Shown: piece after piece, positions 1 through 58,929 of the stretch | Layout of the letters: every line of letters begins with the position of its first letter | Numbering within the stretch: position 1 is the stretch's first letter | Assembly: GCF_039654945.1 (NCBI RefSeq) | Contig: NW_027361788.1 | Location: 33,852,001-33,916,000, forward strand | Reading direction: 5' to 3' | Origin: Dendrobates tinctorius | Taxonomy: Eukaryota | Length of the DNA stretch: 64,000 bases | Notes under the pieces: generated by a model | Told to the model about the DNA's origin: nothing | Database searches by the model: none | The model's input: only the letters and a program-made list of their open reading frames with translations | Made by a program: the position numbers and the translations under genes

Positions 1-2695
1 CTCATGTATGGTGGACTTGATCCACCTGGCAAGGGTAGCCTTGGAAGCCGGCAGTCCCTTGCGACTACCTTCTGGAAGAATGAAGAGGGAATCAGACTTC
101 CGGAAAGGTGCAGTCCTGGACACGTAAATCCGCAATGCTCTGACGAGGTCAAGCGTATGCAGAGCCTTCTCCACTCTATGAACCGGAACCGGGCAAAGGG
201 ATGGCAGTGAAATCTCCTCATTGAGGTGAAAGTTGGACACAACCTTCGGAAGGAAGGATGGTACCGTGCGGAGAACCACCTTGTCCTGGTGAAAGGCTAG
301 GAAAGGCCGTCTGCAGGAAAGTGCTGACAATTCCGACACTCTGCGTAACGAGGTGATCGCCGCTAGAAAAACCACTTTCAAAGACAGAATGGAGAGTGGA
401 ACTCCTCTAAGAGGTTCGAAGGGTGAAGCTTGCAATGCTGTCAGGACCAGATTGAGGTCCCACGTATCCAGCGGACGTTTGTAGGGAGGAACCAATCGGG
501 AAACTCCCTGGATGAAAGTCCTTACTTGCGGTTTAATAGCAATACGCTTTTGAAAAAGGACTGAAAGCGCCGACACCTGACTCTTAAGCGAACTTAAGGA
601 TAGCTTGGCATCTAGGCCCGATTGAAGAAAACCTAGTACCTTCGGGAGGTAATAAGGGAGTGGGACTTGTCCATGAGATTCGCACCAAGAAAAGAAAGCT
701 CTCCACCAGGTACGATAATAGATCTTGGTGGAGGCAGGCTTCCTTGCCCTGATCATAGTTGCAATGACTGCCGGTGAAAAACCTGCCTGGGTTAGAATCC
801 AGGTTTCAAGGGCCATGCCGTCAAATTGAGAGCCCCTGAATTCTGGTGGAAGAACGGACCTTGAGACAGAAGGTTGTGACGGTCAGGTAGACGCCAGGGG
901 GCGTCTGCTGTAAGTTGGACGATGTCGGCGTACCATGTACGTCTGGGCCAGTCTGGCGCGATGAGGATGGTCGGAACTCCCTCTTGCTTGATCTTCCTCA
1001 CGACCCTGGCGATTAGGGGGAGGGGTAGAAAAATGTACAGGAGTCGGAACTGGGACCAGTCCTGGACCAGAGCATCCGCTCCGAGCGACCGCGGGTCGTG
1101 TGTCCTGGCCGTGAAATTGGGGACCTTGGTATTGAGATGGGATGCCATTAGGTCCACCTCCGGGGTTCCCCAGCGTTGACAGATCTGGTAAAAAAATCTC
1201 GGGATGGAGAGACCACTCCCCCGAGTCCATTCCTTGCCTGCTGAGGAAGTCGGCTTCCCAGTTTTCTACACCCGGAATGTGTACCGCAGAAAGTACCGAC
1301 CTCGTGTCTTCCGCCCAGCGGAGGATATGAGCCACTTCTCTCATCGCCTGGGCGCTGCGGGTCCCGCCTTGGTGGTTCACGTATGCCACAGCCGTGGCAT
1401 TGTCCGACTGTATCCGTATGTGCGAGGCTGCAAGCGAGTGATGAAAGGCTCTCAGTGCCAAGAGGATGGCCCTGATTTCCAGAATATTGATGGGCAATGT
1501 CACTTCCCTCGGTGACCACTTGCCTTGTGCCCTGTGATGTAGGTGCACCGCCCCCCAGCCTGTCAGGCTTGCATCGGTAGTCAGGATCTTCCATTGTCCT
1601 GAGAGGAATGGCTTCCCTCGTGTAATCGAGGTTGGTTTGAGCCACCAATGCAGGGACCTCCTGGTTGATGACGTCAACCTGAACTCCCTGTCGAGGGAGA
1701 AGGGGTTCCTGTCCCAAAACCTGAGTATGGCTAGTTGAAGGACCCTGAGGTGAAACTGGGCAAATGGCACTGCCTCTATTGCTGCTGCCATCCGGCCTAG
1801 GACTCTCATGGCAATCCGGAGAGATCGAGGAGGACTGCGAAGGAGTGTGCGAACTCCCAGACGGATGGCCAGTGTCTTGTCCTTGGGAAGGAGTACCAGG
1901 CCCCTGGCGGTGTCGAATACCATTCCCAGGAATGTTAGAGTCCGAGTTGGGACAGTCGACGATTTCTGTAGGTTGACTAGCCATCCCAGGCGACTCAGAG
2001 TGTCTAGTGTGATTGAGACACTGACCTCGCAGTCCTTGAAAGTGGGAGACTTGATGAGGAGGTCGTCCAGGTACAGGATGACTAGAATGCCTCTTGAGTG
2101 CAGGGCGTCCATGGTGGCCGCCATGACTTTGGTGAACGTTCTTGGAGCCGTGGCAAGTCCGAACGGAAGGGCGACAAACTGGTAGTGATTTTGGTTGACC
2201 GCGAACCTGAGAAACCTTTGGTGGGCGGGAGCAATTGGTATGTGGAGGTACGCATCCTGTATGTCTATGGAGGCGAGGTATTCTCCCTGGTCCATGGATG
2301 CAATGATGGACCGGAGGGACTCCATGCGGAAATGACGGACCCGTACGTAATTGTTGAGCTGTTTTAGGTCCAGAATGGGTCAGATGCCGCCTCCTTTCTT
2401 GGGGACTACGAACAAATTTGAGTAGAATCCTCGGAATCTCTCGTTCGCGGGAACCGGCACCACAACTCCTGATTGAAGGAGAGAGGAAACCGCTTGGTGG
2501 AATGCACGAGCCTTTTCTGGTGGTGTTGGAGGAATAGAAAGGAAGAACCGGTTCGGTAGAGTTCACTTCCGTTCCATCTTGTATCCGGAAGACACTATTT
2601 CCCTGACCCACCTGTCTTCTGTAATAGGCAGCCAGACTTGCTGAAAGAGTAAAAGTCGGCCGCCTACTGGTGGGGTGTCTTCCGGAGGTCGCGAG
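1..2695 (-). pseudogene. DIRS copy A ORF3: long frame overlapping pol and ending in the tyrosine recombinase domain (domain ~820 to window edge)
   Basis: The ORF track 1148..2611 is in frame with gag and broken by an indel at the A-run near 1190-1197. Positions ~820..1 read MIRARKPAS..LKSQVSALS..LNLVL..LRRVSEL..ARWIKS, homologous to the YR domains of copies B and C. Confidence 0.85.
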
Positions 2696-2700
2696 TCATG
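792..2700 (-). pseudogene. DIRS copy A pol: reverse transcriptase, RNase H and DNA N6-adenine methyltransferase-like domain, disrupted
   Basis: Motifs include VGGRLLLF, FYSNLFVVPKK, IDIQDAYLHIPI, LPFGLATAPR, YLDDLLI, TTDASLTGWG, DLMAS and LIAPDWPRR. There are in-frame stops near 2563 and 2380 and a frameshift near 1195. Confidence 0.92.
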
Positions 2701-4266
2701 ATGAAGCGAAGTTCTGAGGTTTTCCTCCCTTGGGTTTCGCTTGGCCTGCTTTCGACTGCCTAGCCCTGTCCGGTCGCTGCTGCGTCCGTGGGTTGTCCCT
2801 GCGTGGAGAACGGTTACGGTTTTGCACTGGGTGCGAAACGGACCAGCCCGAGGAATTCCGAAAGGATCGGAATCGCGTCTGGTTTCTTCGTTTAAACGTG
2901 CGTTTCGGTTTTAGTTGAGGGAGAGAGGTACTCTTACCCCCAGTGGCATTGGCAATCATGGTGTCCAACTTTTCGCCGAAAAGTCTCCCAGTAAAATACG
3001 GAAGTCGCGTGAGGGACTTCTTTGAGGCCGCATCCGCTTTCCATTCTCGCAGCCAGAGGATGCGTCGGATCGTGATGGCGTTTGATGCTATTCCCGCTAC
3101 ACCTCTGGCGGAATCCAGGGCTGCATGAATCATGTAGTCTGCTACCACTGCTATCTGGACCGCTTGGTCCGAGAGCTCAGGATTTGAAGCCTGAAGACCC
3201 TCCTGTAGTTTTTTGGCCCAAGCCAGGATGGCCTTGGCTGCCCAAACTGAAGCAAACGCAGGGCCCAGAGAGGCGCCTGCCGCTTCGAAAATAGAACGAA
3301 CCATGCGTTCTACTTGCCGGTCTGCTGCGTCCCTGAGGGTTGAGCTATCCGGCAGAGAGAGTAAAGTCTGCGCTGCTAGCCTAGAAACCGGAGGGTCCAC
3401 TTCAGGTGGATCTGTCCATTGTTTGGTGTCTTTCTGTGGGAAGGGGTACTTCGCTTCCAAATATTTGCGATTAGCGAATTTTTTCTCAGGCTGCGCAAAC
3501 TGTTTGGTAAGTATTTTCTCAAACTCATCGTGATTAGGGAAGACCTTAGGTGGTTTCTGAACACTTTCGAAGCAAATCCTATGTTCTGGGACTTCCGGGG
3601 CCGACTCTGGAATTTTTAGCACCCGATGAATGGCAGAAATTATGTCCTCAACTAGCGCTGTATTGCTAGGGGGAGAAGGTACCACGGACCTGACCGTTTC
3701 GTTATCTGAGTCGGAGTCACAGATGCCCTCCGAATCCTGTGCCTCGCTAAGGAGATCCCTGGAGGGCGACCTGGGGCGGGGGTCTTCTGTGGTGGGGGAT
3801 CCCTGTGGTAAATTGCACTGTCTGTCTGTGGCAGGGGACTGCCCAGGAGACCTGGAATGACGCTGTCTCTCCCTGGAGGGGGACGACCTTGTGCTATAGT
3901 GCGACTCAGGTGATCGAGACCTGTGGGTCCGCTTACGTCTGTGAGAGTCGGAAGCAGCATGTTCCTGAGACAAGCTGTCCGTTTGCTGTGTACCGTCCAT
4001 AGCCGGGGCCCGACTCTGCAGAGCTTGCAGCAATGTGGCAGTTAGGTTGTCTATGGACTGTGTCATAGACTGTGACATCTGAGTTGCCCATTCCGGCGTG
4101 GCCTGTGACACTGAAGCGTCAGTAGGGACTCCCTGGGGTTCTGACCCAGAGTTCAGGATGCAGTCCCAGCAGTGCGGATACGTGCTGCCACTAGGGAGCG
4201 TGGCTTTGCAGGCTGTGCAGAATGCATAGAAACATCCTGCCTGGTTCTCTTCCTTGAGCCCGGCAT
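2696..4266 (-). CDS. DIRS copy A ORF1 Gag-like protein (N-terminal CxxC-x12-CxxC, LAP2alpha-like C-terminal domain)
   Basis: 525-codon open frame with CTACKATLPSGSTYPHCWDC and PEVDPPVSRL..DRQVE..RRILWLREWKAD..LFGEKLD. The likely true ATG at 4266 (MPGSRKR) is out of frame with the body, implying a small indel near 4225-4240. Confidence 0.85.
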
Positions 4267-5448
4267 AGTGCACAGAGGCTGGCTATAAGGGATCGTACAG
4301 GGGTGGCTACGCAGAGGGAACCCACAGAGAGCCTTATAGGAAGTATAGATTCACAGCTGAGTATGAGAACCCAGCTGTGAGCTTACCCCTCCGGTGTGCC
4401 CCTAGGTCCAGCGCCGACAGATCCCAGTTCTGTGCCCCCCGGAGACCGCTGTGATGCTCCTCTCCTGGATCTCATCCAGAAAAAATGGCCACCGGGACTC
4501 TGAGGAGAGGGAGGAGGGGGCGGAGAGCTGAAAAGGGCGCGCTGGGCTGTGTAAAAACGCGCCCTTTCTGCCTCAATCCGCCCCTTCTATGACACTCCAG
4601 CGTGTCATTTTGGTCATCCGGGGGGCGGGGAAAAGGCGGTGGCTTCGGCTAGGCCGAAGCCGCGGTCTAAATTAGAAGCCTGATGCCCGGGAGGGCTCCA
4701 GAGCGGGGCGGTAGTCCGGGGGGGGGGGGGGGATTTGTACCAGACCCCCCCAGAATGGTCGACTGGATAGCGGTGGGGGTAGCAGTTTCCATATGGGGGG
4801 CCCCTGAAGCGCTATGGAGCCGCTGCTGTTGCAGAGACAGGGATGCAGAAAAGCCCTGTCTCTGCTGTGCCATCCAGTCCGCACCCTCCCCCGGCCCCAA
4901 CAGGATCCCTCAGCCGGCCTGGGGTCCCTGGAAGCTGCGGAATGCTGCCTGATCTCCGACCCTACCTGAGGCGTCTCAACCTAATGCCCCCTGCGGGGGA
5001 AGAGGGAGGGTGCGTCTGTCACCGTCAGGGGGTCTTCATCCTCACCTCAACCCAGACCCCTTAAAGGGGTTGGGGAGGGAGGGGGGTCTCGACCTCGAAC
5101 CAGGACCCGAAGGACTGGGGAGGGAGCGACATGGGGAATAGCCACCTCGACCTCAACCGGGTACCCCTGATAGGGGACCGAGGAGGGAGCCATGCCGGGA
5201 GTCTCGCTGGAGACCCACTTTTCTTCATCTGTATTTCCGGACGAAAAAAGGAAAAAATGGAAGAAAAAAAAGGTGTGCCTCCTTGCGACACTAAGCAAAA
5301 ACTGGAGAAGGCTGACGCCGTCCAGGGGTGTATACTGCAGAGGAGGAGCCAAAGTTAATCTTTTTCAGATTATGCATAGTGTCGCCTCCTAGTGGACAGC
5401 AGCATAACACCCACGGTTCTGTGTCCCCCAATTAGGCGACAGAGTAAA

Positions 5449-15575: not shown

Positions 15576-17054
15576 ATGCCCAACCCTGCAAGGGCTCCTT
15601 ATCCTAGACCCACTGTTACTCACTACGTCTGCGCGCGCTGTAAAAAGAAGTGGGCGTCAGGTCAGTCGTCTCCCTTCTGCCCGTCCTGCAGGCCTTTCAC
15701 TATGTCTGCCCCACTGGACCACCCAGAGTCCCGGGATGAGAGCACTCCCCCCTCCCCCAGAGTGGGCCGTTGCAATGTCTGTTGGTCTCTGACCTGCCTA
15801 AAGTTTCTCAGTCCCTGGTCCAGGTCTTAGAATGATTACCTCAGCTATCTACAGCTACCTGTGCGCTGACCGCCTCTCACGGTGAGTCGCCTGCACCTGA
15901 CCGTGACCTCCAGAGGGACAGACCGGGTTGGAGTTCTAGGAAACGGGCTCTGTCTGGCTCTTCTTCCAGCTCGCAAGGTCCTTCCGCTCTGCCCAGGCGA
16001 CTTTCCTCGTCTCCTTCCTCAGAAGACGACTTTAGGTCAGACTATGATTCCCAGTCGGGATCTGACTCAGAGGCAGACATGTCTAAAACACAGGACATGG
16101 TAAATAGTCTCATATCGGCTATTTCTCAAACGCTCAAAATAAAGGAAGACAAGGCGCCCCTCCAGGACTGCTCTGTCCCCTTTAAACGAGCGAAACCTCC
16201 CTCCCAAACCTTTCCTAATCACAAGGAGTTCGAGACTACTTTAACCAAACACTGGGAACACCCGGAGAAGCGTTTCTCAGGCCGCAGGTACTTAGGCGTC
16301 CTATATCCCTTTTGATGCGGATCTTCTCACTTCATGGACAAAAGCTCCTGAGGTGGATCCACCAGTTTCCCGTCTTTCCTCTAAGACGGTTCTATCCCTT
16401 CCGGACGGGGCATCTCTTAAAGATCCAACAGACAGGCAAATAGAATCACTGGCTAAATCAATTTTTGAGTCATCCGGCGCATCTCTCTGCCCTATTTTCG
16501 CCTCCTCCTGGGTGGCAAAAGTCCTTTCAGCTTGGGCAAAAATTCTTTGCAAAGGCATCTTGGCGTCGGCTCCTCAGGACGAGTTGGCAGATTTAGCAGA
16601 CCAAATTAATCATGCGGGTAAATACCTCTTGGCCGCCTCCTTAGCTCTTGCTGCGCACCCCGCCGCATCCAACAGCAACATAGTAGCCATACACCGTATC
16701 CTTTGGTTGAAGGCATGGAGTGCAGACACTACTAAAAAGTCACTCACCAGCCTGGCATTTCACGGTTCTAGGCTCTTTGGCGCCAAGCTGGATCAGATAA
16801 TTTCTGATGCCACTGGAGGTAAAAGTACCTCCCTTCCCCAGTCTCGGCCTAAACGGTTCTTCAACAGAAAAGCTTCTCGGCCGTTTAGGTCCTTTCGCCC
16901 CTTCTCTTCCGCGGAAGGGTTATCTCAGCAGGACCGGCCCTCTACCCCCAGTGAATGGAGAAAACCATCGTATAAGCCCGCTCCCCGCTGGAAATCAAGA
17001 GGCCAACCCTCCAGGTTGTCAGGCTCCCGCTCCGGTATATTTTCCTCTAAGTGA
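15576..17054 (+). pseudogene. DIRS copy B gag, frameshifted
   Basis: Fragments 15576.. (CARCKKK..CPSC), 16079.. and 16353..17054 (DPPVSRL..LFGAKLDQIISDATGGKSTSLPQ) are collinear with copy A gag. Confidence 0.88.
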
Positions 17055-19690
17055 CGGGTCACCCCCACCTGGAAGTTCTTCCAGGGTGGGAGGCAGACTT
17101 TCTTCTTTCATGGACGCATGGCTGTCTGTTGTCACCACATGAGGATCCTCCACTTCAAGATAGAGTCCCTGCGCTCGGTGATAGCCTCGATGGAACCCGG
17201 AGAGTTCCTCTGCTCTGTGGACATACAGTATGCCTATCTTCACATCCCTGTTTATCTGCAACATCAGAGATATCTTCGTTTTGCAATTCAGGAAAATCAC
17301 TATTAGTTCACGGACCTTCCCTTCGGCCCTTCCCCCGTGTCTTTACGAAGGTGATGGCAACGGTCATGGCCATTCTTCGCTCCAGGGGGATTCTCATTAT
17401 CCCTTATCTGGACGATCTGTTGATCAAGGGCTCGTCCCGCCAAGACTGTCTTCAAAGTCTTCAGCTATCTCTGGATACTCTTGCACGTCTCGGTTGGATG
17501 GTCAACAAAGAGAAGTCCATCCTGCACCCTACTCAGCGTCTGACTTTCTTGGGCATGGAATTCGACACAAATCTAGCCCGTGTGTTTCTTCCGAGGGACA
17601 AATTTTCAGCCCTTTGCAAGGGAATCCGACCCCTAAAACGACCAAGGCCCATTCCCCTTCGGTCCTGCATGAGGGTCCTGGAGAAGATGATAGCTTCCAT
17701 GGAAGCAGTGCCTTTCGTGCAATTTCACACTCGTCCTCTCCAGCTGTCCCTACTTTCAGCCTGGGACAAGACCTCTGTTTCTCTGGACCGCCCCATAATC
17801 CTTCCTCTCAGAGTACGGCAATCCCTGACTTGGTGGACAATTCCGGCGTCAGTTCTACAGGGGAGGTCCTTTCTCCCACTTCAGTGGCAAGTCATCACCA
17901 CCGATGCCAGTCTTCTAGGATGGGGGGCGGTTTTCAACCAGAAAACAGCTCAAGGGCGCTGGAACGCCCAGGAGACTTCTTCCCATCAACCTTCTGGAAA
18001 TCAGAGCGATCTTCCTTGCCCTCAGCTGGCAGCCTCTCCTCGCAGGCAAACCAGTCCGCATTCAATCAGACAACGCCACGGCCGTGGCGTACATAAACCA
18101 CCAGGGCAGTACTCGCAGCAGGCAGGTAATGGCAGAAGTGGCAAAGATACTGCGTTGGGCAGAGCGTTATGTTCCGGCGATCTCCGCCGTTCACATTCCA
18201 GGGGTGGAAAATTGGGCAGCCGACTTCCTAAGTCGCCAGGGCCTAGCGTAAGGCAAATGGTCCCTTCACCCCACAATCTTCAGTCAGATATGCCAGCGTT
18301 GGGGCACCCCAGACATCGATCTCATGGCATCTCTGATGAACCACAAAGTTCCTCACTTCATAGCCAGGTCCAGGGACCCTCTAGCTGTCTGTTGCGACGC
18401 CCTGGTAATTCCGTGGTCCCAGTTCCAACTTCCTTACCTGTTTCCTCCTCTTGCCTTGATCCCAAGGGTGGTCAAGAAAATAAAATCAGAAGGCATCCCA
18501 GTACTTCTCGTGGCCCCAGACTGGCCAAGACGACCTTGGTATGCGGAGCTGGTGAACATGCTCGTGGACGTTCCCTGGAGGCTTCCAGACCGTCCAGATC
18601 TTCTCACAAGGCCCCCTTTACCACCAGAATTCTCAGTCTCTGAGTTTAATGGCATGGCCGTTGAGGCCGCAATTCTGAGAGAATCAGGTTTTTCCAACCA
18701 GGTCATTCAGACCATGATCAGAGCTAGAAAGCCAGCTTCCTCCGGCATTTACCATAGGTACTGGAAGGCTTTTTTCCGTTGGTGCGACGATAATGTTTTT
18801 CCATTGTCGTTCTCCATTCCATCCATACTTGGCTTCCTCCATTCCGGCCTTGATGTGGGCCTGTCCCTCAGTACCCTCAAAGGCCAGGTCTCGGCTCTGT
18901 TGATTCTTTTCCAGAGGGATCTGGCCCCCTTACCGCAAGTTAAGACCTTTCTCCAGGGAGTCGCCCACGTGGCTCCTCATCATTCTCCGATAGATCCGTG
19001 GGACCTTAATCTCGTTCTCGGCTCTCCAAAACACGCTGTTCGAGCCTATCCAGGACATTCCTCTTTCCCTTCTCTCATGGAAGGTAACTTTCCTGATCGC
19101 CATTGCATCCATTAGGAGAGTTTCGGAGCTGGCGGCTTTATCCTGTCGTTCCCCGTACCTAATCCTCCATCAGGATAAGGTCGTTCTCAGGCCCGTCCCC
19201 TCCTTCCTTCCCAAAGTGGTATCCTCTTTCCACATTAATGAGGATATCGTCCTTCCCTCTTTTTGCCCTGCGCCTGTTCACCCTCTGGAAAAGTCACTCC
19301 ACAAACTGGATGTGGTGAGAGCCTTGCGTGTCTATCTTGCCAGGACCGCTTCTCTTCGTCAATCCGATTCCCTGCTTGTCATCTCTGAAGGTCGACGGAA
19401 AGGGCTTCCGGCATCCAAATCTACAATTGCTCGCTGGATTCGTTCTACCATACTGGAAGCTTACCGCCTCCAGGAGAAACTGCCCCCTTCCGGAGAGCCC
19501 ACTCCACCCGGGCAGTAGGGGCTTCTTGGGCTGTTCGACACCAGGCTTCGGCTTTACAACTTTGCAAGGCCGCGACCTGGTCGTCTTTGCACACGTTTGC
19601 GAGGTTCTACAAGGTTCATACCCAGGCCTCGTCTGATGCAGGTTTCGGTAGGAAGGTTCTGCAGGCGGCGGTAGCACACTGGCCGACCTA
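17050..19690 (+). pseudogene. DIRS copy B pol (RT, RNase H, MT) and tyrosine recombinase, disrupted
   Basis: Motifs VGGRL, PYLDDLLI, TTDASLLGWG, LVAPDWPRR, MIRARKPAS, LKGQVSAL, IRRVSELAAL and HSTRAVGASW occur across several frames. Confidence 0.9.
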
Positions 19691-20889
19691 AGCCTTTCCT
19701 TCTCGTTCCTTTATTGCTGTTCCTACCCTCGGGACTGCTGTGGAACGTCCCATGGTAATCTGTGTCCCCCAATGAAGCGATAAAGAGGGATTTTTGGGTT
19801 CTTACCGTAAAATCTCTTTCTTGGAGCCTTCATTGGGGGACACAGCACCCTCCCTGTTTAAGTTGTACCGTGTTGGGTCTTCGAGTCCCTTGTTGGGTTG
19901 GTACATATTTTAAGAGTTTTTGTTGCTTCTCCTACTGCTTTTTCACTAACTGAGGTACTTAGTGCCTGTTGGTAGGTGTATACTGCCGGGGAGGAGCTAA
20001 TTTTCCTTTTTTGCATAGTGTCAGCCTCCTAGCAGCAGCATACACCCATGGTACTCTGTGTCCCCCAATGAAGGCTCCAAGAAAGAGATTTTACGGTAAG
20101 AACCCAAAAATCCCTCTGTTTGGCCCATTAGAGAATCTACTAATGGCCTCAATCTGAACACTAATCCTGTACATCTAAATATCCATAGGACAATTATTGA
20201 AGTTGCCATGAGGCTGACGTCCCACATCCGACCTTCAGCGCCTGAGTACGGCTGAAACGCGACCGACTCATATGAGTCAGGAGACCCAGGACCTGTTTGT
20301 ACTCGGATGATGAATGTCGCATGGGTGAAGCCAGCTTATTGCATTACGCCTTCAGGGCTGCAGCTATCCTGCTTGGTGATGGTTTCTGGGTAGCATCAGA
20401 GTAAATGAAAAAAAAAAAAATTATAGATTTGCAAAAAAAATTATAAAAACACTATTGTCCTGAGTTTTAAAGCCCACCCAAGAATGAGATAAATATGGAG
20501 ATCATGGTCCCTGGGGCCAGGACACCCAATTAGTGAGAAGATCCCTTCATACAGTGCACAGCGACCTCTGTGTATTAATTCTTGCACCAACTTCTAACTG
20601 ATCAGATGTCTTCTTCCATTTTGTAACCATCATAGAATAATAAAATCTGGTGCTCAGATAAAGCCTGTACCTTGTTACACAAGATAGTATGTGATCAGGG
20701 TGCACAGTAATGGATGAAAACCGAAGTCTGAGCGCAGAAGACCTGGGTTTATACCTGGATTTCCAGAAATGTAAAAAAAAATATAAATTAGGAGAGGGTT
20801 TCTAATTTAGCCTTTTTAGTCAAATTTTGGTCCCTGCAATTTGTCCTTTCGTCGATGTCCTGTTATCCGTGGACTGTGCAGATCTAACT

Positions 20890-23800
20890 TCAGAGAGGGG
20901 TTCGAGGACGGATCGGGGAGCTGGATAAAGTAGCCTCCCCAAAAACATTGTTATATGAGGATTTCAGGAACTGGACATAGTTCTGCATGCTGCGGTTGGT
21001 GCTTTCGGACTGTTCCAGTCGGTCTTTTAGATCTTGTAAGCGACTCTGAAACCGTCTCTCAGCCTGGATGGGAGAAGAGGTATCAAATTGTGATCTTGTA
21101 AATAAGCCAGAAGCTCAAAAAGTAAAGCAAAAACCACTGCACACAGTAAACATCTATAGGAAGAAGGGGTACAGCTTGTACTCAGCACACAAACGGTCAC
21201 CTTCCAGTACTGTCTCCACTGCACCGGCCATACGGCGGCAGGGGGGGATAGGAAGAGGGAGGTGTCAGGATTACAAAAGGGTTAAATTAAATCTTTGTAT
21301 ATGGTCTTACTGAAACGGATTAAAGGGTTAAAAATGCCCAAATTCACATAATACGGCCCTGTAACTCACATATTCAGTAGCTGCAGGGCCTCCTACAAGT
21401 ACCCGTAATCCTTACCCACCAAAGTACAGGTGTCCCTTCTTATAAAGGCGCTATATGGAGGGACTGGAGCGGTGGTCGAGCGTGTGCACTAGGGTGACTG
21501 GATCTCAAATTGGGGGAAAAAATGTCAGAATCTTGTTCGTCTGGACCCCACAAAACGATTCCCCTTTCCAGATATTGAGAGAGCCAAAATTTGAGCTCGA
21601 TCAAACGACGTTAACCCGTGCCGCTCATCGCTCAAAGTTTGAAAAAATCCAAATTGAGGTGTTTTAAGATTTAGGTATTTCTCGTTCGCCTTATTGGGGG
21701 ACACAGAGACCTTGGGTGTATGCTGCTGCCACTAGGAGGCTGACACTATGCACAAAAAAAGGTTAGCTCCTCCTCCGCAGTGTACACCCCACCGACCGGC
21801 AGAGAATTCCTCAGTTTAGCTTAGTGTCAGTAGGAGGTGGACACGGGTCTTTTATTAGACCCATATCTACCTCGTCGTGCGTCGTTCCTTTTCAGGTTCT
21901 ACGGAGGGATACAGAGTGAAAAGTCACATCTGTACTCCCACATGGAGTCTGCAAGTACGGCGTGTACTGCCACCCCGTATCCTTGCAGTTCTCCGCGGCA
22001 GGACCAGCCAGACGGACGCCGACACCAAGACGTGCCAGCGACTCCAGGGGTCCTTGTCGCCAGTCTCCCTCCCACTCGCCTACCAGAGCCTGTCGGTTGG
22101 ATGAGACGCAAGACTTCTTCAGACAGGTAACGGATCGTGGATGGGTATTTTTTTTTTTTTTATTTTTATTTATTTACCTGGCTGCCCATTCCCGACGGTC
22201 GCCTCTTCAATGGTCACAGGGGAACCCCGGTTGTAGGCGCTGCGGTCGCTCGCAGTCGCCACAAGGCTATAGGCAGCTCAATGTTGCTGGGCATCCCCTC
22301 CTTCCCTCCCCCCTTTCTGGGGACAGGGAGCACAGGGTTTTTTCCCATTGGGAGCGGCTTGCGACTGCGGCGTCCCACTTTTTCGGACCTCCGCGCCGAC
22401 CCCCTGCTGACAGGCGGCCGCCGCAACTAATTTAGGCCCCGGCTTCAGTTCGGGCCTACCGCTGCGTCGCGGCCACGCCCCCCGCCCCTTTCTTCTAAGC
22501 GGGCTTCTCTCCCGCTCTTCCCAGGCCCTCCCACCGCCTGTCCTTCACCTGCCCAGCCTGTTATTGGCTAGAGGGCGGTGAATTATTAACCCTGCGTGGT
22601 GCTCCGCCCTCCCTCCTCTCCTGAACGCGCGCTTTTTCTCAGGAAGGCGCCATTTTCCCAGCCTGTTAGCCGGGCACCAGCTCCTCACTGGATAGCATCT
22701 TCTCCAGCTGGTTTTTTCAGGAGGTCTGTCGGCCGGATTTCGCTCTGACCTGCATCCACTGACAGGTCGCAGAGCATCGCTTCTGGGGACACCGGACCGT
22801 GAGTAGCTCTGCACTGCAGACTGACCCTTCTCCGCCCTCTGTCCCCCAACCTTCCGGCATTACCTCAGCTTTTCACTATGTCTAACTCTAAGTCTGATCG
22901 TACCCGCTCTACCGCCCCCCCCTGCACTTTAGTCAAGTACTTTGCATGTTCTTCGTGCAATCGCAAACTTCCCTCAGGCCAGTCCACTCCCCTCTGCCTG
23001 GATTGTAGCAATCCAATTCAGCCTGAGGCCGTCCAGGAGCCATCTGCGGCCCCAGGTGAGAGTGAGCCCCCCATGCCTGGCTGGGCCTCCTCGCTATCTC
23101 AATCAGTGGCAGACCTCACCAGGGTGTCTCAGTCCCTGGTGGCCGTTCTTGATAAGTTGTCCCTGGACTCTTCAGCAGGGCCAAGCAGGTCCCAAATTGT
23201 TCCATCTGAATCAGCCAGCGGTAGTCGCAAAAGACCCAGGCAAGATTCCCAGCCGGAATCCTCTCCTAGTCCCATCTCACCGCATAGCCCTTCTCACCAG
23301 CCTCCCTCTCGGGCCTCCTCCCGAGTCAGGGGAAGCGCTTTCGGAGAGGTCATCTGAGGGGATTTTAGAGCTGCATTCAGACCAGGATGCAAGCATGAAG
23401 GTCACAGTGCAGGACCTCATTGCTGCGATCCATCATACCTTCGATATTGCTGACTCCCCTGCGAAATCCTCAGATCAGGAGGTTTCGTTCAGACGGGCAG
23501 AAACTCCCTCCAGGGTTTTTCCTTTCCATTCCGAGTTTGGGAAAATTTTTACCAAGGAAAGAGAGGATCCGACCAGACGCTTTCAAAGAGGAAAACGTCT
23601 CGGCATACTCTACCCATTTGCTAAGGAGCTCACGGACAACTGGTCGGCCTCTCCCTCGGTCGATCCGCCCGTGTCCAGGCTATCCAATAACACGGTTCTC
23701 CCGCTTTCAGGCGTGGCGTCCCTAAAGGATTCTAATGACAGCATTATAGAATCCCTGGCGAAGTCTGCCTTTGAAGCGGCTTCAGCGGCGGTGTGTCCAA

Positions 23801-26800
23801 TTTTTGCTTCATCCTGGGCAGCAAAGGCCATAGCCACGTGGGCAGACGACCTTCGTCAGGGCATCTTAGATAAGGCGCAACCGGAGCATTTGGCCGATCT
23901 CGCCAATCAGATCTCCCATGCTGGGGACTATCTTCTCTCCGCTTCCTTGGATGCTGCATCCTGTGCAGTTCAGGCGTCAAGCAACGTTGTTGCAATTCGA
24001 CGTACAATTTGGCTAAAGGCATGGCAAGCTGACTTGTCTTCTAAAAAGTCCCTCACTAACCTGCCTTTTCAGGGGGTGCGCCTCTTTGGGTCCCAATTGG
24101 ACCAGATTATTAAGGACGCCACCGGAGGCACGAGTTCACTCCTCCCTCAGTCCAAGCCTCGCAGACCCCCACTAAGGTGTCAGTTTCGACCCTTTCGGAC
24201 TTTCCGCCGTTTCAATACGGCGGACAACTCCTCCAGCCAACAGAGACCGCAGGCTCGCCAGGAGAGAAAGAAAGAGTTTCCTTCAGACCCACTCCTTCCT
24301 GGCGACCCCACTCCTCCCAGGGCAGACCGTCCAGATCTAGATCTGGACGGTCTACTTCAGCATGACTATCATCGGGCACGCGAGGGGCCTTTCCAATTGG
24401 GAGGTCGACTTCTTTCCTTCAGGGACGTTTGGCTGGCCGCCGTGGAGGACGCCTGGGTCAGGGAGGTCGTATCCTCAGGATACAAGATAGAGTTCGTCTC
24501 TCTCCCACGGGATCGTTTCTTCGAATCCCGGCCTCCAAAGGATCCAGCCTTGATCCCGGGGTTCTCTACGGCTATCGCCGCTCTCCTCAGTTCCGGGGTG
24601 ATTGTGCCCGTTCCCGAATCGGAGCGCTTCACGGGGTTCTACTCGAACCTGTTTGTAGTGCCGAAAAAAGACGGCGCAGTTCGACCCATCTTGGATCTCA
24701 AGCTGCTCAACAAGAGGGTCCGCCTTCGCCACTTCCGCATGGAGTCGCTTCGCTCGGTCATCGCCTCCATGGAGGAGCAGGAATTCATGTGCTCAATAGA
24801 CATCCAAGATGCCTATTTACATGTTCCAATTTTCTCCGGACATCAGAAGTTCCTGCGCTTTGCGATTCGACAGCACCACTACCAGTTTGTCGCACTGCCC
24901 TTCGGTCTTGCCACCGCTCCCAGAGTCTTCACGAAGATCATGGCTGCGTTGATGGCTTTGTTGAGAGTCAGAGGCCTCGTTCTTTTCCCGTACCTAGACG
25001 ATATTCTGATCAAGGCTCCCTCATTCCAAAAGGCTCACCAAAGTTTGTCAATCGTCCTGGACACTCTTTCCAATTTCGGGTGGATCGTCAACAGGAAAAA
25101 GTCCTGTCTGGTTCCTACCCAACGCCTGGTCTTTCTAGGTCTTCTGTTCGACACTCGTCGGTCAAGGGTCTTTCTCCCACAAGAAAAGATTCTCTCTCTG
25201 CAGCAGGAAGTACGATCGCTGCAGACCTCGAGATTCCCATCCCTCCGTACAGCCATGAGGGTCCTGGGAAAGATGGTGGCGGCGATAGAGGCAGTTCCCT
25301 TTGCCCAATTTCACGCCAGGCCTCTCCAGCAAGCCATTCTGTCGAAGTGGAACAGGTCGCCTCGGTCCCTGGATCGCCCTGTCCATCTTTCTTACCGGAT
25401 CAAGCGGTCTCTCAACTGGGGGTTGTCGTCACCTCTCATTCTATCGGGTCGATCCTTCCTTCCCATTCACTGGCAGATAGTAACCACAGATGCCAGTCTC
25501 GGTTGGGGTGCTGTGTTCCGCAACCACACTGCCCAGGGTCGATGGTCGGATCGGGAATCAGCGCTGCCGATCAACGTTCTGGAGATTCGAGCGATCCATC
25601 TTGCTCTGGTCCACTGGGAAAGGCTCCTCAAGGGACTGCTGGTACGGATTCAGACAGACAACGCCACAGCGGTGGCATATGTCAACCGCCAAGGGGGAAC
25701 ACTGAGTGTCTCAGCCCTGGCGGAGGTGTCCAAGATTCTTCGTTGGGCGGAGATTTCCGTTCCGACAATTTCCGCGGTTCACATTCCCGGCGTAGACAAC
25801 TGGGCCGCCGATTTTCTCAGCCACGAGGGTCTCGCGGCGGGAGAATGGTCCCTACATCCGGAAGTGTTTCATCTGCTCTGCCTTCAGTGGGGAACCCCGG
25901 ATGTAGACCTCATGGCGTCTCGCCTCAACAGGAAAGTCCCACAATTCGTGTCCAGGTCTCGGGACCCTCTGGCAGTGGGCGCCGACGCCCTGGCCGTTCC
26001 TTGGTCCCAGTTCGAACTTCCCTACCTGTTCCCTCCTCTGCCTCTTCTTCCCAAGCTGTTGAAGAAGATCAAGGCAGAAGGACTTCCGGTCATTCTCATC
26101 GCCCCGAATTGGCCCAGAAGGTCTTGGTTCGAGGACATTGTCAACCTTCTCGCGGACGCCCCCTGGAAGCTTCCAGACAGAACAGATCTGCTGTCTCAGG
26201 GTCCGATTTGCCACCCCAATTCTCGGCCGCTCAATTTAACGGCGTGGCTGTTGAGACCGAGGTTCTGAAACGAGCAGGATTTTCCGACCACGTAATTCAG
26301 ACCATGATCCGAGCCAGAAAGCCATCATCTTCCAAGATTTACTACTGTACTTGGAAGGCCTATTCCACTTGGTGTGAGACCAATGACGTCGCGCCCATGT
26401 CCTTTTCGCTCCCTTCAGTCCTAGCGTTTCTTCAGGCAGGATTGGATGCGGGGCTTGCCCTCAGTTCCCTGAAGGGTCAAGTTTCGGCGCTGTCCATTCT
26501 GTTTCAGAAAACGTTGTCTTCCCTTCCTCAGGTTAAGACCTTTCTTCAGGGCGTGGCTCACACGGTCCCGCCGTACCGGGCGCCCGTGGATCCATGGGAT
26601 CTTAATCTGGTTCTTGAGGTTCTGCAAGGTCCGCCCTTTGAACCCCTCAGGGATATTTCCCTTTCTCTCCTTTCTTGGAAGGTAGCCTTTCTGGTGGCCA
26701 TCACCTCCGTCCGGCGCGTGTCAGAATTGGCAGCTCTTTCGTGCTCTTTCTGGTTCTCCACCAGGATAAGGTAGTTCTGCGGCCTCCGCCCTCGTTCCTT

Positions 26801-29800
26801 CCGAAGGTGTGGTGTCCTCGTTTCACCTCAACGAGGATATCGTGCTACCGTCCTTTTGTCCGAATCCAACTCATCCCCGAGAGCGGTCCTTGAACAAGCT
26901 GGACCTGGTTAGGGCGGTAAGAGTCTGTCTAGGACGACTTCCTTGCGAAAGACAGAGTCTCTTTTCATTATCCCTGATGGAGCGCGGAAAGGTCACCCGG
27001 CGTCAAAGGCCACCATTGCTCGCTGGATCAGATCGGCTATCCTGGAAGCCTACCGTGTTAAGCGTCTCGGAGCCCCTCCGGGTATCAGAGCCCACTCTAC
27101 TCGGGCAGTGGGTGCCTCCTGGGCGGTGCGCCACAGAGCTTCCGCACTGCAGCTTTGCAAAGCTGCAACATGGTCATCGGTTCACACGTTTGTGAAATTC
27201 TACAAAGTCCACACCTACGCTTCGGCGGACGCCAGTCTAGGTAGACGGATTCTGCAGGCCGCGGTGGTGAGTCCGCTGGCCTGATGGAAGTTTGTTTCCC
27301 ACCCCAGGGACTGCTTTGGGACGTCCCAAGGTCTCTGTGTCCCCCAATAAGGCGAACGAGACAACAGGATTTTTGGGTTGCTTACCGTAAAATCTGTTTC
27401 TCGGAGCCTTCATTGGGGGACACAGCACCCTCCCATGTTTTACAGCTCCTGTTCTTACTTTGGTTGAATGGTTACAGTTGAGTTGTTTATGTTGTCAACC
27501 TATTCTGTTACTTCTCCTACTGCTTTCTCACTAACTGAGGAATTCTCTGCCGGTCGGTGGGGTGTACACTGCGGAGGAGGAGCTAACCTTTTTTTGTGCA
27601 TAATGTCAGCCTCCTAGTGGCAGCAGCATACACCCAAGGTCTCTGTGTCCCCCAATGAAGGCTCCGAGAAACAGATTTTACGGTAAGCAACCCAAAAATC
27701 CTGTTTTTGCATAGTCTGTTAGACTATAAAGAATGTGACAACAACATTGCAGAAATAGCCCTGACCAAATTTTCGAACCATTTGTGGTATTTGAATGCAG
27801 AGTTGGTGGAATTATCGTTTTTTGATCCCACCATTACAGACAATGAAAAGTTGTTAATGGCTAATAAATTGCTCAGTAGCACAGATGAACCATCAGAGCA
27901 CGCTAAGCTACACGAGTTGATAATTTTACATAGTTATCTAATCTATTCTAGAGCTTTTGTTAAAGTAGTTTTTGAAACGTCAGAATATAATGCTCGGCAT
28001 TTGCTTACAACTTGCAGGACAAATTGCTTTTGTTCTTCATCTTTTGTCAGAAGGTCGTTAAAGTCGGTTACTTCCTACCTCTTAATTTTTCTTTCCTAAC
28101 TTTTGGATTTACAACCCTAGCGTGCTCTGATGGTTCATCTGTGCTACTGAGCAATTTATTAGCCATTAACAACTTTTCATTGTCTGTAATGGTGGGATCA
28201 AAAAACGATAATCCCACCAACTCTGCATTCAAATACCACAAATGGTTCGAAAATTTGGTCAGGGCTATTTCTGCAATGTTGTTGTCACATTCTTTATAGT
28301 CTAACAGACTATGCAAAATACCTAAATCTTAAAATACCTCAATTTGGATTTTTTCAAACTTTGAGCGACGAGCGGCACGGGTTAACGTCGTTTGATCGAG
28401 CTCAAATTTTGGCTATCTCAATATCTGGAAAGGGGAATCGTTTTGTGGGGTCCAGACGGACAAAATTCCGACATCGATTTTTTGCGGTCACCCTAGTGTG
28501 CACTGCCGATCAGGTTGGGTCCCAGCCGTCGCACACCCACTGATCAGCAAGTATTCACCTTCCTGGCTTGTTTTCATTGGACAACCCCTTTAAGAGGTAC
28601 ACTCCCAGTGCATTTTCCTCTGTCTTCATTTTACAGTGTCAGCATTGAGTGTGAGATTTAAGAAATGGCATGAACACGTAGCTAAAATGCGGCATGTCTG
28701 CTGTACAGATGCTATGTGAGAACAAACGGTAAAGAGATGAAGGGAGTAAGTCTGGCCCTGCACAGAAGATAGTAGTCTGCTGGACATTCACGGTTAGCTG
28801 AGAGCGATTCTTCCTAACCTCACCAGCTGCTTATTTCATTTAAAAGAGAGGTCCAGCATTAGAAAAAGATGGCTGCCTTCTTCTGAAAACGACGCCACAC
28901 TCGTCCTAGACGCTGGTGGTCTGCAGGTCACCAACTTTGTGTAGGGATAAGACATGATATTTCCATTCTGACATTCACATGAATCTGAACCCACAACTTA
29001 CGTCTTCTTTGCTGCGGCGAAATTGGTTTAATTCAGTTTTGGTTCTGCTTAGTTGAGTTTCCAGATCCAGAATTTTGGATTGTGTGACCCTCTCTTTGGA
29101 AGACGCTCGCTCCCTGGTCTGCTCTACCTAAAAAAAAAAAAAAGTGTTTTTGATTAGGGCTTAGAAAATTATGGCAGGGGACATCTTGTATAGTGATTGC
29201 TGGATGCAGTGCCGTCGCCTTACGCACCTTGTATACGCCCATAGGCGGAAAGTTACCATAGACCCCTATTCATACATAGAAGGCTAAAAAGGGTGTGTAC
29301 GATGAATACAAATGCCTTAAAGCCCAAATTCAGGGTGCAAAGATCTTGAAAGGGAATATGGTTGCATAAAATCAAACCAAGCACAGGTGCTCAGTGCACC
29401 CTTGGTGTGGCCAGACAGTTCAGTGTGTTTTCCCTCCCACTTGTTTCCCCTCTATCTTAGCCCTCTTCCTTGAGTGACAGCTTTGGCTTTACAGGAGCCA
29501 GATGAGGGGTGATGGATGTAAAACAAGTAATTAGGAAGGAGCACTGAACTGCTCTGCAGCACCAAGAGTGCACCCTGTACCTGTGCTTGGTTTGAAAAGT
29601 TGTAAATGTCCCTACTTGCCTGTCTACGGGAATCCTCGATGGCAGCCTCCAACTGTCGAGATAAAGAGGCACACTCCCGGGTTTTCTCCTCCAGGCGGAG
29701 CTGGTTCTGATGAATCGTCTCTTCTCGTTTGGCCACAACTTGTAGAAGTTCCCGGTTCTGAGCTCCAGCGTCGTCCAGTCTCCTTTATCAGAAGAGCATC

Positions 29801-58172: not shown

Positions 58173-58929
58173 TGCTCTCTGTTGGATGGTTTTCTGAAAA
58201 AAAAAAAAAAAAAAAAAGCAAAGAAGAAATAATATGTAAAAAAAAATAAATAAATAAATTCCACCAAAAATCCTCAAGACTGCAGCAACATGTGCTTATA
58301 TATTAATTCCTCATATATCACATTCCTCAATAAATAAGACGTTCATCAGACAACATGCTGCCGCCTAGGGCAGCCTGTACTATGCAGACCGCTATCAGAC
58401 AGCAGCAGACGTCAGGAAGGCTCTTAATGGGGTATTTCTAGAATAATCCAGTGCAAAATGTCCAGATTTTGCTTGAAATTCATCTGCACAAATCCACAAT
58501 CTTCCCGTTATATTTGCATCTTCCCCGATGATCTGGATCAGAACAGACTCCCATTGATGCGGATTAAGCCCATCTGTAGTCAGCAGCGCTGAGAGCGAGC
58601 CTGATGGGCTGGGGGAAATGCTGCGGCCCTGGGGAGATGACGGCCATGCTTATTTATCCCCATGGAGCATTGCTGGTACATCTGGATCTGTTCCACCAGA
58701 AGCAGCACCCGGAGCACTCACTAGAGGAGACGGCAGATATACTGGCAGCACGGCGGCATCCTCCCGGGTGCTGAGGAGCCGTCTCCTGGGCTGCACCGAC
58801 TGCAGCGATCCCCGGAGACTGTAAACTGTCCCTATAGTTACCGATGCTTCTTACAACTGTCTGATCCCGAAGCCAAGACGCTCCCTGATGTGGGAGAGGC
58901 CGAGTGACATAGGAGCTCAGGACACCGGG

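What the first reader, a model, noticed from the sequence alone, without database searches (positions are those of the whole stretch)
24357..24432. One TGA-C stop may drive two recoding events in frog DIRS elements: readthrough to Gag-recombinase and +1 shift to Gag-Pol
Seen: in three diverged copies gag ends in TGA followed by C. Copy C reads GCA TGA CTA (24363-24365), copy B AAG TGA CGG (17052-17054) and copy A TCA TGA CTC (2698-2696, minus). In copies A and C frame 0 continues with no stop directly into the long ORF that ends in the tyrosine recombinase; in B it is open up to a deletion. In copy C that frame has no ATG for ~390 codons. In all three, the +1 frame reads GAC (Asp) across the stop and, about ten codons later, a conserved GGRL..F..W with synonymous variation (GGC GGC CGA CTT / GGA GGC AGA CTT / GGA GGT CGA CTT). 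No in-frame ATG lies between the stop and GGRL. Established: UGA-CUA and UGA-CGG are the alphavirus/tobravirus-type readthrough contexts, and +1 shifting at a slow UGA is used by antizyme and bacterial RF2. Inference: one leaky stop sets the Gag : Gag-YR : Gag-Pol ratio. I do not know of this being described for DIRS.
Basis: partly seen in the sequence, partly recalled or inferred. Interest (0 to 1): 0.85.

Follow-up and report, generated by a model that had tools for sequence, protein, structure and literature searches.

The report
One stop codon, three DIRS proteins
In frog DIRS retrotransposons, and in relatives from caecilians, fish and marine plankton, the capsid-like gene ends at one leaky-looking TGA stop, with the recombinase reading frame running straight on and the reverse-transcriptase frame starting one base over, so this one stop probably controls how all three proteins are made, though nobody has yet shown this at the protein level.

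Summary
All three DIRS1-like copies have a gag-frame TGA followed by C. The +1 frame reads GAC and then, 10-11 codons later, GGRL..F..W of pol. The gag frame runs on without a stop into the tyrosine recombinase (YR).

One caveat: all three copies are decayed. In copy C a 1-nt indel puts the gag body in the pol frame, so only the last 83 gag-frame codons end at that TGA.

The layout extends to 14 families (frogs, a caecilian, two fish, marine metagenomes). The stop is TGA in 13 and is followed by C in 9. In 13 of 14, pol is +1 and the YR frame equals the gag frame.

- The roughly 630-codon frame overlapping pol has 0 stops where synonymous shuffles give 14-26, and it has no conserved ATG.
- Substitution phase flips from gag to pol at the stop.
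- The RNA 3' of the stop is unusually stable.
- Contigs cross the junction unspliced.

The "long ORF overlap" is already published, but I found no mechanism for it. Readthrough plus a +1 shift at one stop is the best reading (about 0.5) and is unproven. TGA-C is enriched, not invariant, and the Asp codon is forced by TGA. Two other first-reader notes on this genome raise the same idea.

The parts
2696..2698 (-). Copy A gag stop codon TGA, followed by C (TCA TGA CTC). This is the proposed recoding site.
2699..4273 (-). Copy A gag ORF (525 codons) with a LAP2alpha-type domain.
   Evidence: PF11560, E = 9e-14
2584..2686 (-). Copy A long RNA stem-loop. It starts 9 nt after the stop codon.
   Evidence: -51.8 kcal/mol, z = -5.4. 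The D. tinctorius relative L001 keeps it (z = -2.6).
1189..2695 (-). Copy A pol (RT/RNase H) in the +1 frame relative to gag. The frame has no ATG before GGRL. It contains one in-frame stop at a small rearrangement (2557-2576).
795..1202 (-). Copy A pol C-terminal (methyltransferase-like) part. It is displaced by a private 1-nt insertion near 1190.
   Evidence: the base at 1190 is left out in most contigs.
1153..2695 (-). Copy A 'X' frame: the gag frame continues after the TGA, open for 515 codons over pol, with its first ATG at codon 237.
1..825 (-). Copy A tyrosine recombinase, cut off by the window start.
16353..17051 (+). Copy B gag C-terminal ORF.
17052..17054 (+). Copy B gag stop codon TGA (AAG TGA CGG).
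17053..17130 (+). Copy B pol N-terminus in the +1 frame (DGSPPPGSSSRVGGRLSSFMDAW). A deletion of about 95 pol codons follows.
17151..19673 (+). Copy B remainder of pol and the recombinase, broken by several frameshifts.
22878..23357 (+). Copy C gag N-terminal ORF, starting with ATG.
23308..24270 (+). Copy C gag body (LAP2alpha domain). It lies in the pol frame because of an indel.
24114..24362 (+). Copy C gag tail in the original gag frame (83 open codons). It is homologous to the gag tails of copy B and L006.
24363..24365 (+). Copy C gag-frame stop codon TGA (GCA TGA CTA).
24364..26268 (+). Copy C pol (RT/RNase H/methyltransferase-like) in the +1 frame, 634 codons.
24366..26774 (+). Copy C X frame, running from the stop into the recombinase N-terminal part. 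It has 802 codons without a stop and its first ATG is at codon 392.
26235..27275 (+). Copy C tyrosine recombinase homology, in the same frame as X. A stop at 26772 marks a decayed stretch; the frame reopens downstream.

Best explanation
These are decayed copies of DIRS1-like retrotransposons. Their intact relatives encode three products from one full-length RNA around a single gag stop codon.

- Most ribosomes end at the gag TGA and make Gag.
- A minority read the TGA as sense. They carry on in the same frame through a sequence-unconstrained spacer of about 630 codons ('X'), overprinted on pol, into the tyrosine recombinase. This gives Gag-X-YR.
- Another minority shift +1 at or next to the same stop, antizyme-style. 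The next codon is then GAY, and they make Gag-Pol (RT/RNase H/methyltransferase-like).
- A weak termination context (TGA, mostly followed by C, often A at -1) and a stable RNA structure starting 6-10 nt downstream would stimulate both events.

Shown here: the conserved layout, selection keeping X open, the lack of usable ATGs, the switch of coding phase at the stop, and the 3' structure.

Inferred: that readthrough and the +1 shift really occur, that both happen at this codon, and what their rates are.
For: Layout:
- In 13 of 14 families gag and X-YR share one frame, separated by one stop, with pol in the +1 frame. The stop is TGA in 13 of 14 and the +4 base is C in 9 of 14.
- In the frog-type families (including the caecilian copy) the stop sits a fixed 10-11 codons before GGRL, although the linker sequence is not conserved.

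The X frame:
- It has 0 stops where synonymous-codon shuffles give 14-26. No shuffle went below 5. The third frame has the expected 20-52 stops.
- Its first ATG falls anywhere from codon 43 to codon 620. The pol frame has no ATG upstream of the junction in 3 of 6 intact families, and in others the first downstream ATG lies beyond the conserved N-terminus.

Coding phase:
- Between copy A and L001, substitutions fall at gag third positions up to the stop and at pol third positions just after it.
- The Ser codon two positions before the stop varies synonymously in the gag frame (TCA/TCG/TCC). In the pol frame the same changes give Q/R/P.

RNA:
- The RNA after the stop is more stable than other windows of the same element in 9 of 10 junctions.
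- Against dinucleotide shuffles, z is negative in 10 of 13 families.
- No -1 slippery heptamer is conserved at the pol end.
- A 616-nt contig in a probable RNA run spans the junction unspliced.

Precedents:
- UGA-CGG/CUA readthrough, with A at -1 and a stem-loop after a 7-9 nt spacer (PMC3159437).
- Antizyme +1 shifting at the codon before a UGA that sits in the poorest termination context. That stop is UGA in about 97% of cases (PMC1874602).
Against: - There is no protein, ribosome-profiling or reporter evidence.
- The +4 base is not invariant, and one family uses TAG-G.
- Only 5 of 14 families have the classic CGG or CUA triplet.
- The last gag codon varies (GCA in 5 families; also TCA, AAG, CAA, ACC, AAT, ACA, CGC), so no single shift codon is defined.
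- The 3' structures share no conserved pairing (RNAalifold -1.3 kcal/mol). Two frog-type copies (C and L002) are not significant against shuffles.
- The pol frame is open for 65-109 codons upstream of the stop. One search shows that gag-tail composition explains this, but an upstream shift site still cannot be excluded.
- A Gag-X-YR protein would carry about 630 residues of apparently meaningless sequence, and DIRS elements have no protease to remove it.
- One catfish copy has X-YR in the +1 frame and pol in the +2 frame.
- Contigs cannot exclude rare spliced RNAs.
Confidence: 0.5

Rival explanations
1. Only one recoding event happens at the stop: +1 frameshifting to make Gag-Pol. The recombinase is reached some other way. 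That could be a later -1 shift from pol into the YR frame, giving Gag-Pol-YR, or internal or non-AUG initiation inside X.
For: The YR frame is -1 relative to pol, and the two overlap by only 10-15 conserved codons at the pol end. This is the classic geometry for a -1 shift. It would also avoid translating about 630 codons of spacer.
Against: It does not explain why X has 0 stops along its whole length, starting exactly at the gag stop, in every family. No X_XXY_YYZ heptamer is conserved in the last 80 pol codons. The first ATG in X varies between codon 43 and codon 620.
Confidence: 0.2
2. Pol and/or X-YR are translated from spliced or subgenomic RNAs rather than by recoding. The stop is then an ordinary terminator.
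For: Copies A and C have a pyrimidine-CAG motif about 55 nt after the stop. Assembled contigs drop rare isoforms. Some retroelements do use splicing.
Against: No joint lies near 2600-2750 in four runs, and contigs cross the junction colinearly. Full-length contigs L006, L009 and L011 are also colinear. The CAG motif is just the F-Q/R codons of pol and is missing in the X. laevis copy. Splicing would not require X to share the gag frame, nor to be open right up to the gag stop, in 13 of 14 families.
Confidence: 0.12
3. The +1 shift to pol happens at an unidentified site upstream in the gag tail, inside the 65-109-codon overlap, and not at the stop. The TGA serves only for termination or readthrough.
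For: The pol frame is open well upstream of the stop in all families. Decayed copies fused by 1-nt indels in this tail (copy C, X. laevis L003, P0027) give uninterrupted gag-pol ORFs.
Against: The open window is what gag-tail composition predicts: observed lengths match the shuffle medians. No nucleotide motif is conserved in the tail. Gag-frame-synonymous variation continues to two codons before the stop. The fixed distance from the stop to GGRL argues that the stop position itself matters.
Confidence: 0.12
4. The open X frame is a by-product of base composition or codon bias and is never translated.
For: The elements are GC-rich, and long alternative-frame ORFs can arise by chance in GC-rich DNA.
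Against: Shuffles that preserve both codon usage and protein sequence give 14-26 stops, with a minimum of 5, against 0 observed in seven families. The other alternative frame has 20-52 stops, as expected.
Confidence: 0.03

Closest known systems
DIRS1-like retrotransposons with 'long ORF overlap' (Piednoel et al. 2011, PMC3266345; XtDIRS2/3. Xenopus families in PMC9210276)
   Same: The gene set matches: gag with a LAP2alpha-type domain, RT/RNase H/methyltransferase-like pol, and a tyrosine recombinase. The recombinase ORF extends far upstream over pol in another frame, and the catalytic part lies in the non-overlapping 3' end.
   Different: The papers I could read describe the overlap but give no expression mechanism. 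They do not state that the YR ORF is in frame with gag across a single TGA, or that pol starts in the +1 frame at that stop. Older subscription papers (Goodwin and Poulter 2001, 2005) could not be read.
Readthrough of UGA-CGG/CUA with an extended 3' stem-loop (alphaviruses, tobra-, peclu-, furo- and pomoviruses; Firth et al. 2011, PMC3159437), and MuLV gag-UAG-pol readthrough
   Same: The stop is a UGA, often with A at -1 and CGG, CUA or UGG after it. A stable stem starts 6-10 nt downstream, the region just 3' of the stop is more conserved than its surroundings, and a long in-frame downstream ORF encodes an enzyme.
   Different: Here the read-through ORF begins with about 630 codons overprinted on another gene and shows no sequence constraint of its own. 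The 3' triplet is the canonical CGG/CUA in only 5 of 14 families. No pairing is conserved between families.
Antizyme +1 frameshifting at the codon before a UGA (Ivanov and Atkins 2007, PMC1874602); Ty3 GCG-AGU-U; bacterial RF2 CUU-UGA-C
   Same: ORF2 is in the +1 frame, overlaps the end of ORF1, has no start codon of its own, and is reachable only by ribosomes that translated ORF1. The stop is almost always UGA in a weak context, a 3' structure lies close to the site, and the first codon in the new frame is GAY, as in UCC-U-GAU.
   Different: The codon before the stop is not UCC, CCC or UUU. It is mostly GCA or TCA and varies between families. No 5' module was identified. The same stop would also have to be read through, which is not known for antizyme.

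Membership tests
DIRS1-like retrotransposon (order DIRS) | Gag-like ORF, with a LAP2alpha-type domain in vertebrate families | tested here: met
   PF11560 hits in copies A, B and C
DIRS1-like retrotransposon (order DIRS) | RT/RNase H pol followed by a methyltransferase-like region, with no protease or DDE integrase | tested here: met
   RVT_1 hit. Pol aligns 45-54% over its full length to frog-type relatives including the C-terminal region. The absence of a protease was not searched for specifically.
DIRS1-like retrotransposon (order DIRS) | Tyrosine recombinase encoded at the 3' end | tested here: met
   tblastn YR hits at 1-825 (-), 18645-19673 and 26235-27275, with E down to 1e-102. Pfam found nothing on the N-terminal piece alone.
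DIRS1-like retrotransposon (order DIRS) | Long overlap of the YR ORF with pol | tested here: met
DIRS1-like retrotransposon (order DIRS) | Inverted terminal repeats and an internal complementary region | not tested
Programmed stop-codon readthrough (type II, UGA-CGG/CUA plus 3' stem-loop) | Leaky stop context | tested here: inconclusive
   TGA in 13 of 14 families, +4 C in 9 of 14, CGG or CUA in 5 of 14, A at -1 in 8 of 14
Programmed stop-codon readthrough (type II, UGA-CGG/CUA plus 3' stem-loop) | Long in-frame ORF after the stop that is kept open and lacks its own start | tested here: met
Programmed stop-codon readthrough (type II, UGA-CGG/CUA plus 3' stem-loop) | Stimulatory RNA structure about 8 nt 3' of the stop | tested here: inconclusive
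   Stable hairpins start 6-10 nt after the stop in most families, but no conserved pairing was found.
Programmed stop-codon readthrough (type II, UGA-CGG/CUA plus 3' stem-loop) | Read-through protein detected | not testable with these tools
   Needs reporters, mass spectrometry or ribosome profiling.
Antizyme-type +1 frameshifting at a stop | ORF2 in the +1 frame, overlapping the ORF1 end, with no initiation codon of its own | tested here: met
Antizyme-type +1 frameshifting at a stop | UGA in a poor termination context 3'-adjacent to the shift codon | tested here: met
   Compare PMC1874602.
Antizyme-type +1 frameshifting at a stop | Conserved shift-prone P-site codon | tested here: not met
   The last gag codon varies between families: GCA in 5, and TCA, TCT, AAG, CAA, ACC, AAT, ACA and CGC elsewhere.
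Antizyme-type +1 frameshifting at a stop | Trans-frame protein, and dependence on polyamines or another effector | not testable with these tools
   Experimental question.

The most novel reading that the evidence does not exclude
A single stop codon acts as a three-way translational switch in DIRS1-like retrotransposons from vertebrates to marine eukaryotes. Termination gives Gag. Readthrough gives Gag-X-recombinase, through a spacer of about 630 codons overprinted on pol whose only constraint is to stay open. A +1 frameshift at the same codon gives Gag-Pol. This would be the first case of two different recoding events programmed at one stop. It would also explain the 'long ORF overlap' that has been described for DIRS elements without a mechanism.
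Probability: 0.4. Interest if true: 0.88.

Novelty: new variant of a known kind. Interest (0 to 1): 0.78.

Why it matters
DIRS elements make up a whole order of retrotransposons. They are abundant in amphibians and fish and form centromeres in Dictyostelium. In the literature I could search, how one RNA yields Gag, Pol and the recombinase has been left open, and the extensive pol/YR overlap is reported only as a curiosity.

The layout found here is one in-frame TGA between gag and a stop-free frame leading to YR, with pol in the +1 frame at that same stop. It is conserved in 13 of 14 families. That turns the puzzle into a concrete hypothesis testable with a 200-nt reporter.

If it holds, it adds a new recoding configuration: readthrough and a +1 shift competing with termination at one codon. 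It also gives an extreme example of a translated spacer selected only for being open. In practice it explains why genome annotations of these elements produce inconsistent 'gag-pol' models, and it suggests how to annotate them.

Tried and rejected
- Long pol-frame overlap upstream of the stop as evidence for an upstream shift site. Rejected: synonymous shuffles of the gag tail give the same open lengths.
- 'Conserved Asp' at the junction as evidence. Rejected as circular: T-GA-N forces Asp or Glu.
- A conserved consensus RNA structure. RNAalifold on 7 junctions gave only 6 weak pairs (-1.3 kcal/mol). Only family-specific hairpins exist.
- The splice acceptor at the CAG about 55 nt downstream. 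It is not conserved and no joint was seen. The joints seen in the leader (4599->4937 and 4757->4960) are non-canonical and lie in a repeat array.
- ATG overlapping the stop (GC-ATG-AC) as a reinitiation start. It lies in the third frame, which is full of stops.
- A -1 slippery heptamer at the pol/YR overlap. None is conserved.
- Copy C's fused gag-pol ORF as a genuine single-ORF family. Rejected: its gag tail is homologous to others in the other frame. The fused proteins P0027 and P0028 were picked because they carry both domains.
- Literature searches for a described DIRS recoding mechanism found nothing. Goodwin and Poulter 2001 was not retrievable.
- The huge ORFs at 37062-50687 and 58838-61379 are satellite artefacts.
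Full report
**What is in the window**

The window comes from a dendrobatid frog. The best protein hits are Dendrobates tinctorius and Ranitomeya. It holds three DIRS1-like retrotransposon copies:
- Copy A: minus strand, about 1-5400.
- Copy B: plus strand, about 15550-19700.
- Copy C: plus strand, about 22878-27290.

Each has a gag with a LAP2alpha-type domain, an RT/RNase H/methyltransferase-like pol, and a tyrosine recombinase (YR). All three are decayed:
- A has private 1-nt differences at 1190, 4234 and 4362, which most contigs of related sequence lack.
- B has a deletion of about 95 pol codons and several frameshifts.
- C has at least two frameshifts in gag.

**The observation**

The quoted sequences are exact:
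- A: TCA TGA CTC (2698-2696, minus strand).
- B: AAG TGA CGG (17052-17054).
- C: GCA TGA CTA (24363-24365).

In each copy the +1 frame reads GAC and reaches GGRL..F..W after 10-11 codons, with no ATG in between.

After the stop the gag frame stays open:
- 515 codons in A, ending just after A's private indel.
- 802 codons in C, running into YR.
- 83 codons in B, across its deletion.

C's first ATG in that frame is at codon 392.

There is one correction. In copy C the gag body lies in the pol frame, so ORF 22942-26268 is a fused gag-pol ORF. Only the last 83 codons before the TGA are open in the gag frame. That tail (..SFRPTPSWRPHSSQGRPSRSRSGRSTSA*) is homologous to the gag tails of copy B and of L006. 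A 1-nt indel near 24270-24290 explains the fusion.

**Does the layout hold elsewhere?**

I fetched DNA for relatives:
- D. tinctorius (L001), from the same family as copy A.
- Pseudophryne corroboree (L002), nearly intact.
- Xenopus laevis (L003).
- The caecilian Rhinatrema bivittatum (L004).
- Three frog-type elements on contigs assembled from public runs (L006, L009, L011).
- Two elements from marine metagenomes (L012; L013, L014 and L016).
- One further run contig (L017).
- A sea bream (L018).
- A catfish (L005).

Counting A and L001 as one, that gives 14 families. In 13 of them the gag or gag-tail frame and the YR frame are the same, and a single stop separates them. Pol is in the +1 frame, beginning at that stop.

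In the intact examples the post-stop ORF is very long:
- L009: gag 1008-2438, TGA, then 970 open codons to the end of YR.
- L004: 981 open codons.
- L012: 1038 open codons.
- L013: 993 open codons.

The stop is TGA in 13 of 14 families; L017 has TAG-G. The base after the stop is:
- C in 9 families.
- T in 2 (L004 TGA TGG, L006 TGA TGT).
- A in 1 (L009).
- G in 2 (L018, L017).

In the frog-type families (including the caecilian copy) the stop lies a fixed 10-11 codons before GGRL, GARL or GGKL, although the linker is not conserved.

The exception is the single catfish copy. It has ACC TGA CGC, with X-YR in the +1 frame and pol in the +2 frame. About 400 extra nucleotides lie between the gag stop and pol. 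I could not tell whether this is a real variant or damage.

**Is the overlapping frame ('X') kept open by selection?**

Yes. I shuffled synonymous codons within pol, which keeps the protein sequence and codon usage. The frame -1 to pol then acquires 14-26 stops on average, and no shuffle had fewer than 5. The observed number is 0 in seven families. The other alternative frame has 20-52 stops, as expected. This confirms and quantifies the published 'long ORF overlap' (PMC3266345).

X shows no constraint on its own sequence. Between A and L001, substitutions downstream of the stop fall on pol third positions, which are X first positions. X therefore behaves like a spacer that must only be translatable.

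Its first ATG lies anywhere from codon 43 to codon 620, so entry by ordinary initiation is unlikely. No -1 slippery heptamer is conserved at the end of pol. The simplest reason for a frame to be open from exactly the gag stop to YR is that ribosomes enter it from gag.

**Where does pol decoding start?**

Three of six intact families have no ATG in the pol frame upstream of the junction. In several, the first downstream ATG lies far beyond the conserved N-terminus. Pol therefore has to be made as a trans-frame fusion.

The pol frame is open for 65-109 codons upstream of the stop, but the hydrophilic composition of the gag tail fully explains this, since observed lengths equal the shuffle medians.

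Between A and L001, substitutions show gag-frame periodicity up to the last 30 nt before the stop. For example the counts at codon positions 1, 2 and 3 are [1,1,4] in the last bin. Pol-frame periodicity starts immediately afterwards.

Across families the gag C-terminus is K-x-(T/P)-S-A-stop. The Ser codon varies synonymously in the gag frame (TCA/TCG/TCC), and those changes give Q, R or P in the pol frame. Gag is therefore the selected frame to within two codons of the stop.

The Ala codon is GCA in all five families that have Ala, which hints at a nucleotide-level constraint at position -1.

The 'conserved Asp' is not independent evidence, because T-GA-N forces Asp or Glu.

**RNA context**

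Copy A has a 103-nt stem-loop starting 9 nt after the stop (-51.8 kcal/mol, z = -5.4). L001 keeps it (z = -2.6). L003, L004, L006, L009, L012, L013 and L017 have strong hairpins starting 6-10 nt after the stop.

The 60-110 nt after the stop fold more stably than other windows of the same element in 9 of 10 junctions. The Fisher combined p is about 2e-7 at 110 nt, though part of this is due to GC content.

Against dinucleotide shuffles, 10 of 13 families have negative z. My arithmetic gives a Stouffer z of about -4.5, or about -3.2 without copy A.

No pairing is conserved between families. Copies C and L002 are not significant on their own.

The first 120 nt after the stop are also the most conserved stretch between A and L001: 13 substitutions, against about 28-39 per 150 nt elsewhere.

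**Transcripts**

Four public runs of the same organism were laid on copy A. Contigs cover the whole element. A 616-nt contig in a probable RNA run spans 2536-3151 colinearly, and there is no joint near the junction.

Contigs cannot exclude rare isoforms, and the RNA label on that run is a guess.

**Comparison with known systems**

The readthrough half matches the UGA-CGG/CUA class in three ways: A at -1, an extended stem-loop after a 7-9 nt spacer, and enhanced conservation just 3' of the stop. That class even includes a UGA-UGG variant like the caecilian one (PMC3159437).

The +1 half matches antizyme. There ORF2 is in the +1 frame, has no start of its own, and is entered at the codon before a UGA. 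That stop is UGA in about 97% of cases and sits in the poorest termination context, with a nearby 3' structure and branch-specific shift codons that include GCG-UGA (PMC1874602).

Both mechanisms exploit slow termination, so one weak stop could serve both.

I found no paper proposing either mechanism for DIRS elements. The older subscription papers could not be read.

Two other first-reader notes on this genome raise the same idea, and both are unchecked.

**Verdict**

My estimates are:
- The conserved, selected architecture is real: about 0.95.
- X is translated: about 0.8.
- Entry into X is by readthrough of the gag stop: about 0.6.
- Pol is reached by a +1 shift at or next to that stop: about 0.6.
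- Both together: about 0.4-0.5.

It is a new, testable variant built from known kinds of recoding, in a known element family.

Noticed in passing
window 37120-53566: A 16.4-kb satellite with a 20-bp unit (AAATGTGGGGAGGATTGGTG), about 829 copies at 87% match. It creates the spurious 4541-aa and 2762-aa 'ORFs' on the minus strand.
   Followed up: partly
window 59040-61264: A 42-bp minisatellite of about 54 copies. It explains the overlapping long ORFs in several frames and on both strands at 58838-61379.
   Followed up: partly
window 61837-62808 (+): A 323-aa ORF with HTH_Tnp_Tc3_2 and DDE_3 domains. It is a Tc1/mariner-type transposase.
   Followed up: partly
window 1190, 4234, 4362 (copy A): The 1-nt differences that break copy A's pol and gag frames are absent from most contigs of three small, probably RNA, runs. 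The relatives represented there are more intact than this copy.
   Followed up: partly
window 24270-24290 (copy C); L003 about 5460; protein P0027: Independent 1-nt indels in the gag tail fuse gag to pol into one long ORF. Such decayed copies are what gene predictors report as 'gag-pol' proteins carrying both LAP2alpha and RVT_1 domains.
   Followed up: partly
window 26220-26268 (copy C) and homologous sites in L002, L006, L009: The pol C-terminus (..LNLTAWLL..) and the recombinase N-terminus (..FDG(M/V)A(V/L)E..) are encoded by the same nucleotides in two frames. Both peptides are conserved across families, so this is a short stretch of true dual coding.
   Followed up: partly
L005:4750 (catfish Tachysurus vachellii): The gag stop is ACC TGA CGC, but here X-YR is in the +1 frame and pol in the +2 frame. 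About 400 extra nucleotides lie between the gag stop and pol. This is either a different layout or a damaged copy.
   Followed up: partly
L017:2788: This is the only family whose gag stop is TAG (ACA TAG GAT). It otherwise has the same frame layout and a stable 3' structure (z = -2.7).
   Followed up: partly
window 4599-4960 (copy A leader): Contigs in run X1 skip 337 and 202 nt here with non-canonical ends. This looks like copy-number variation in the leader hairpin array, which other first-reader notes flagged (s1-382985).
   Followed up: no
L006:3919 and L002 about 7367: Otherwise intact elements carry single nonsense codons inside the recombinase N-terminal region (WCE*RS and TMI*ARKP). 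In L006 the same stop appears in contigs from three separate runs.
   Followed up: no
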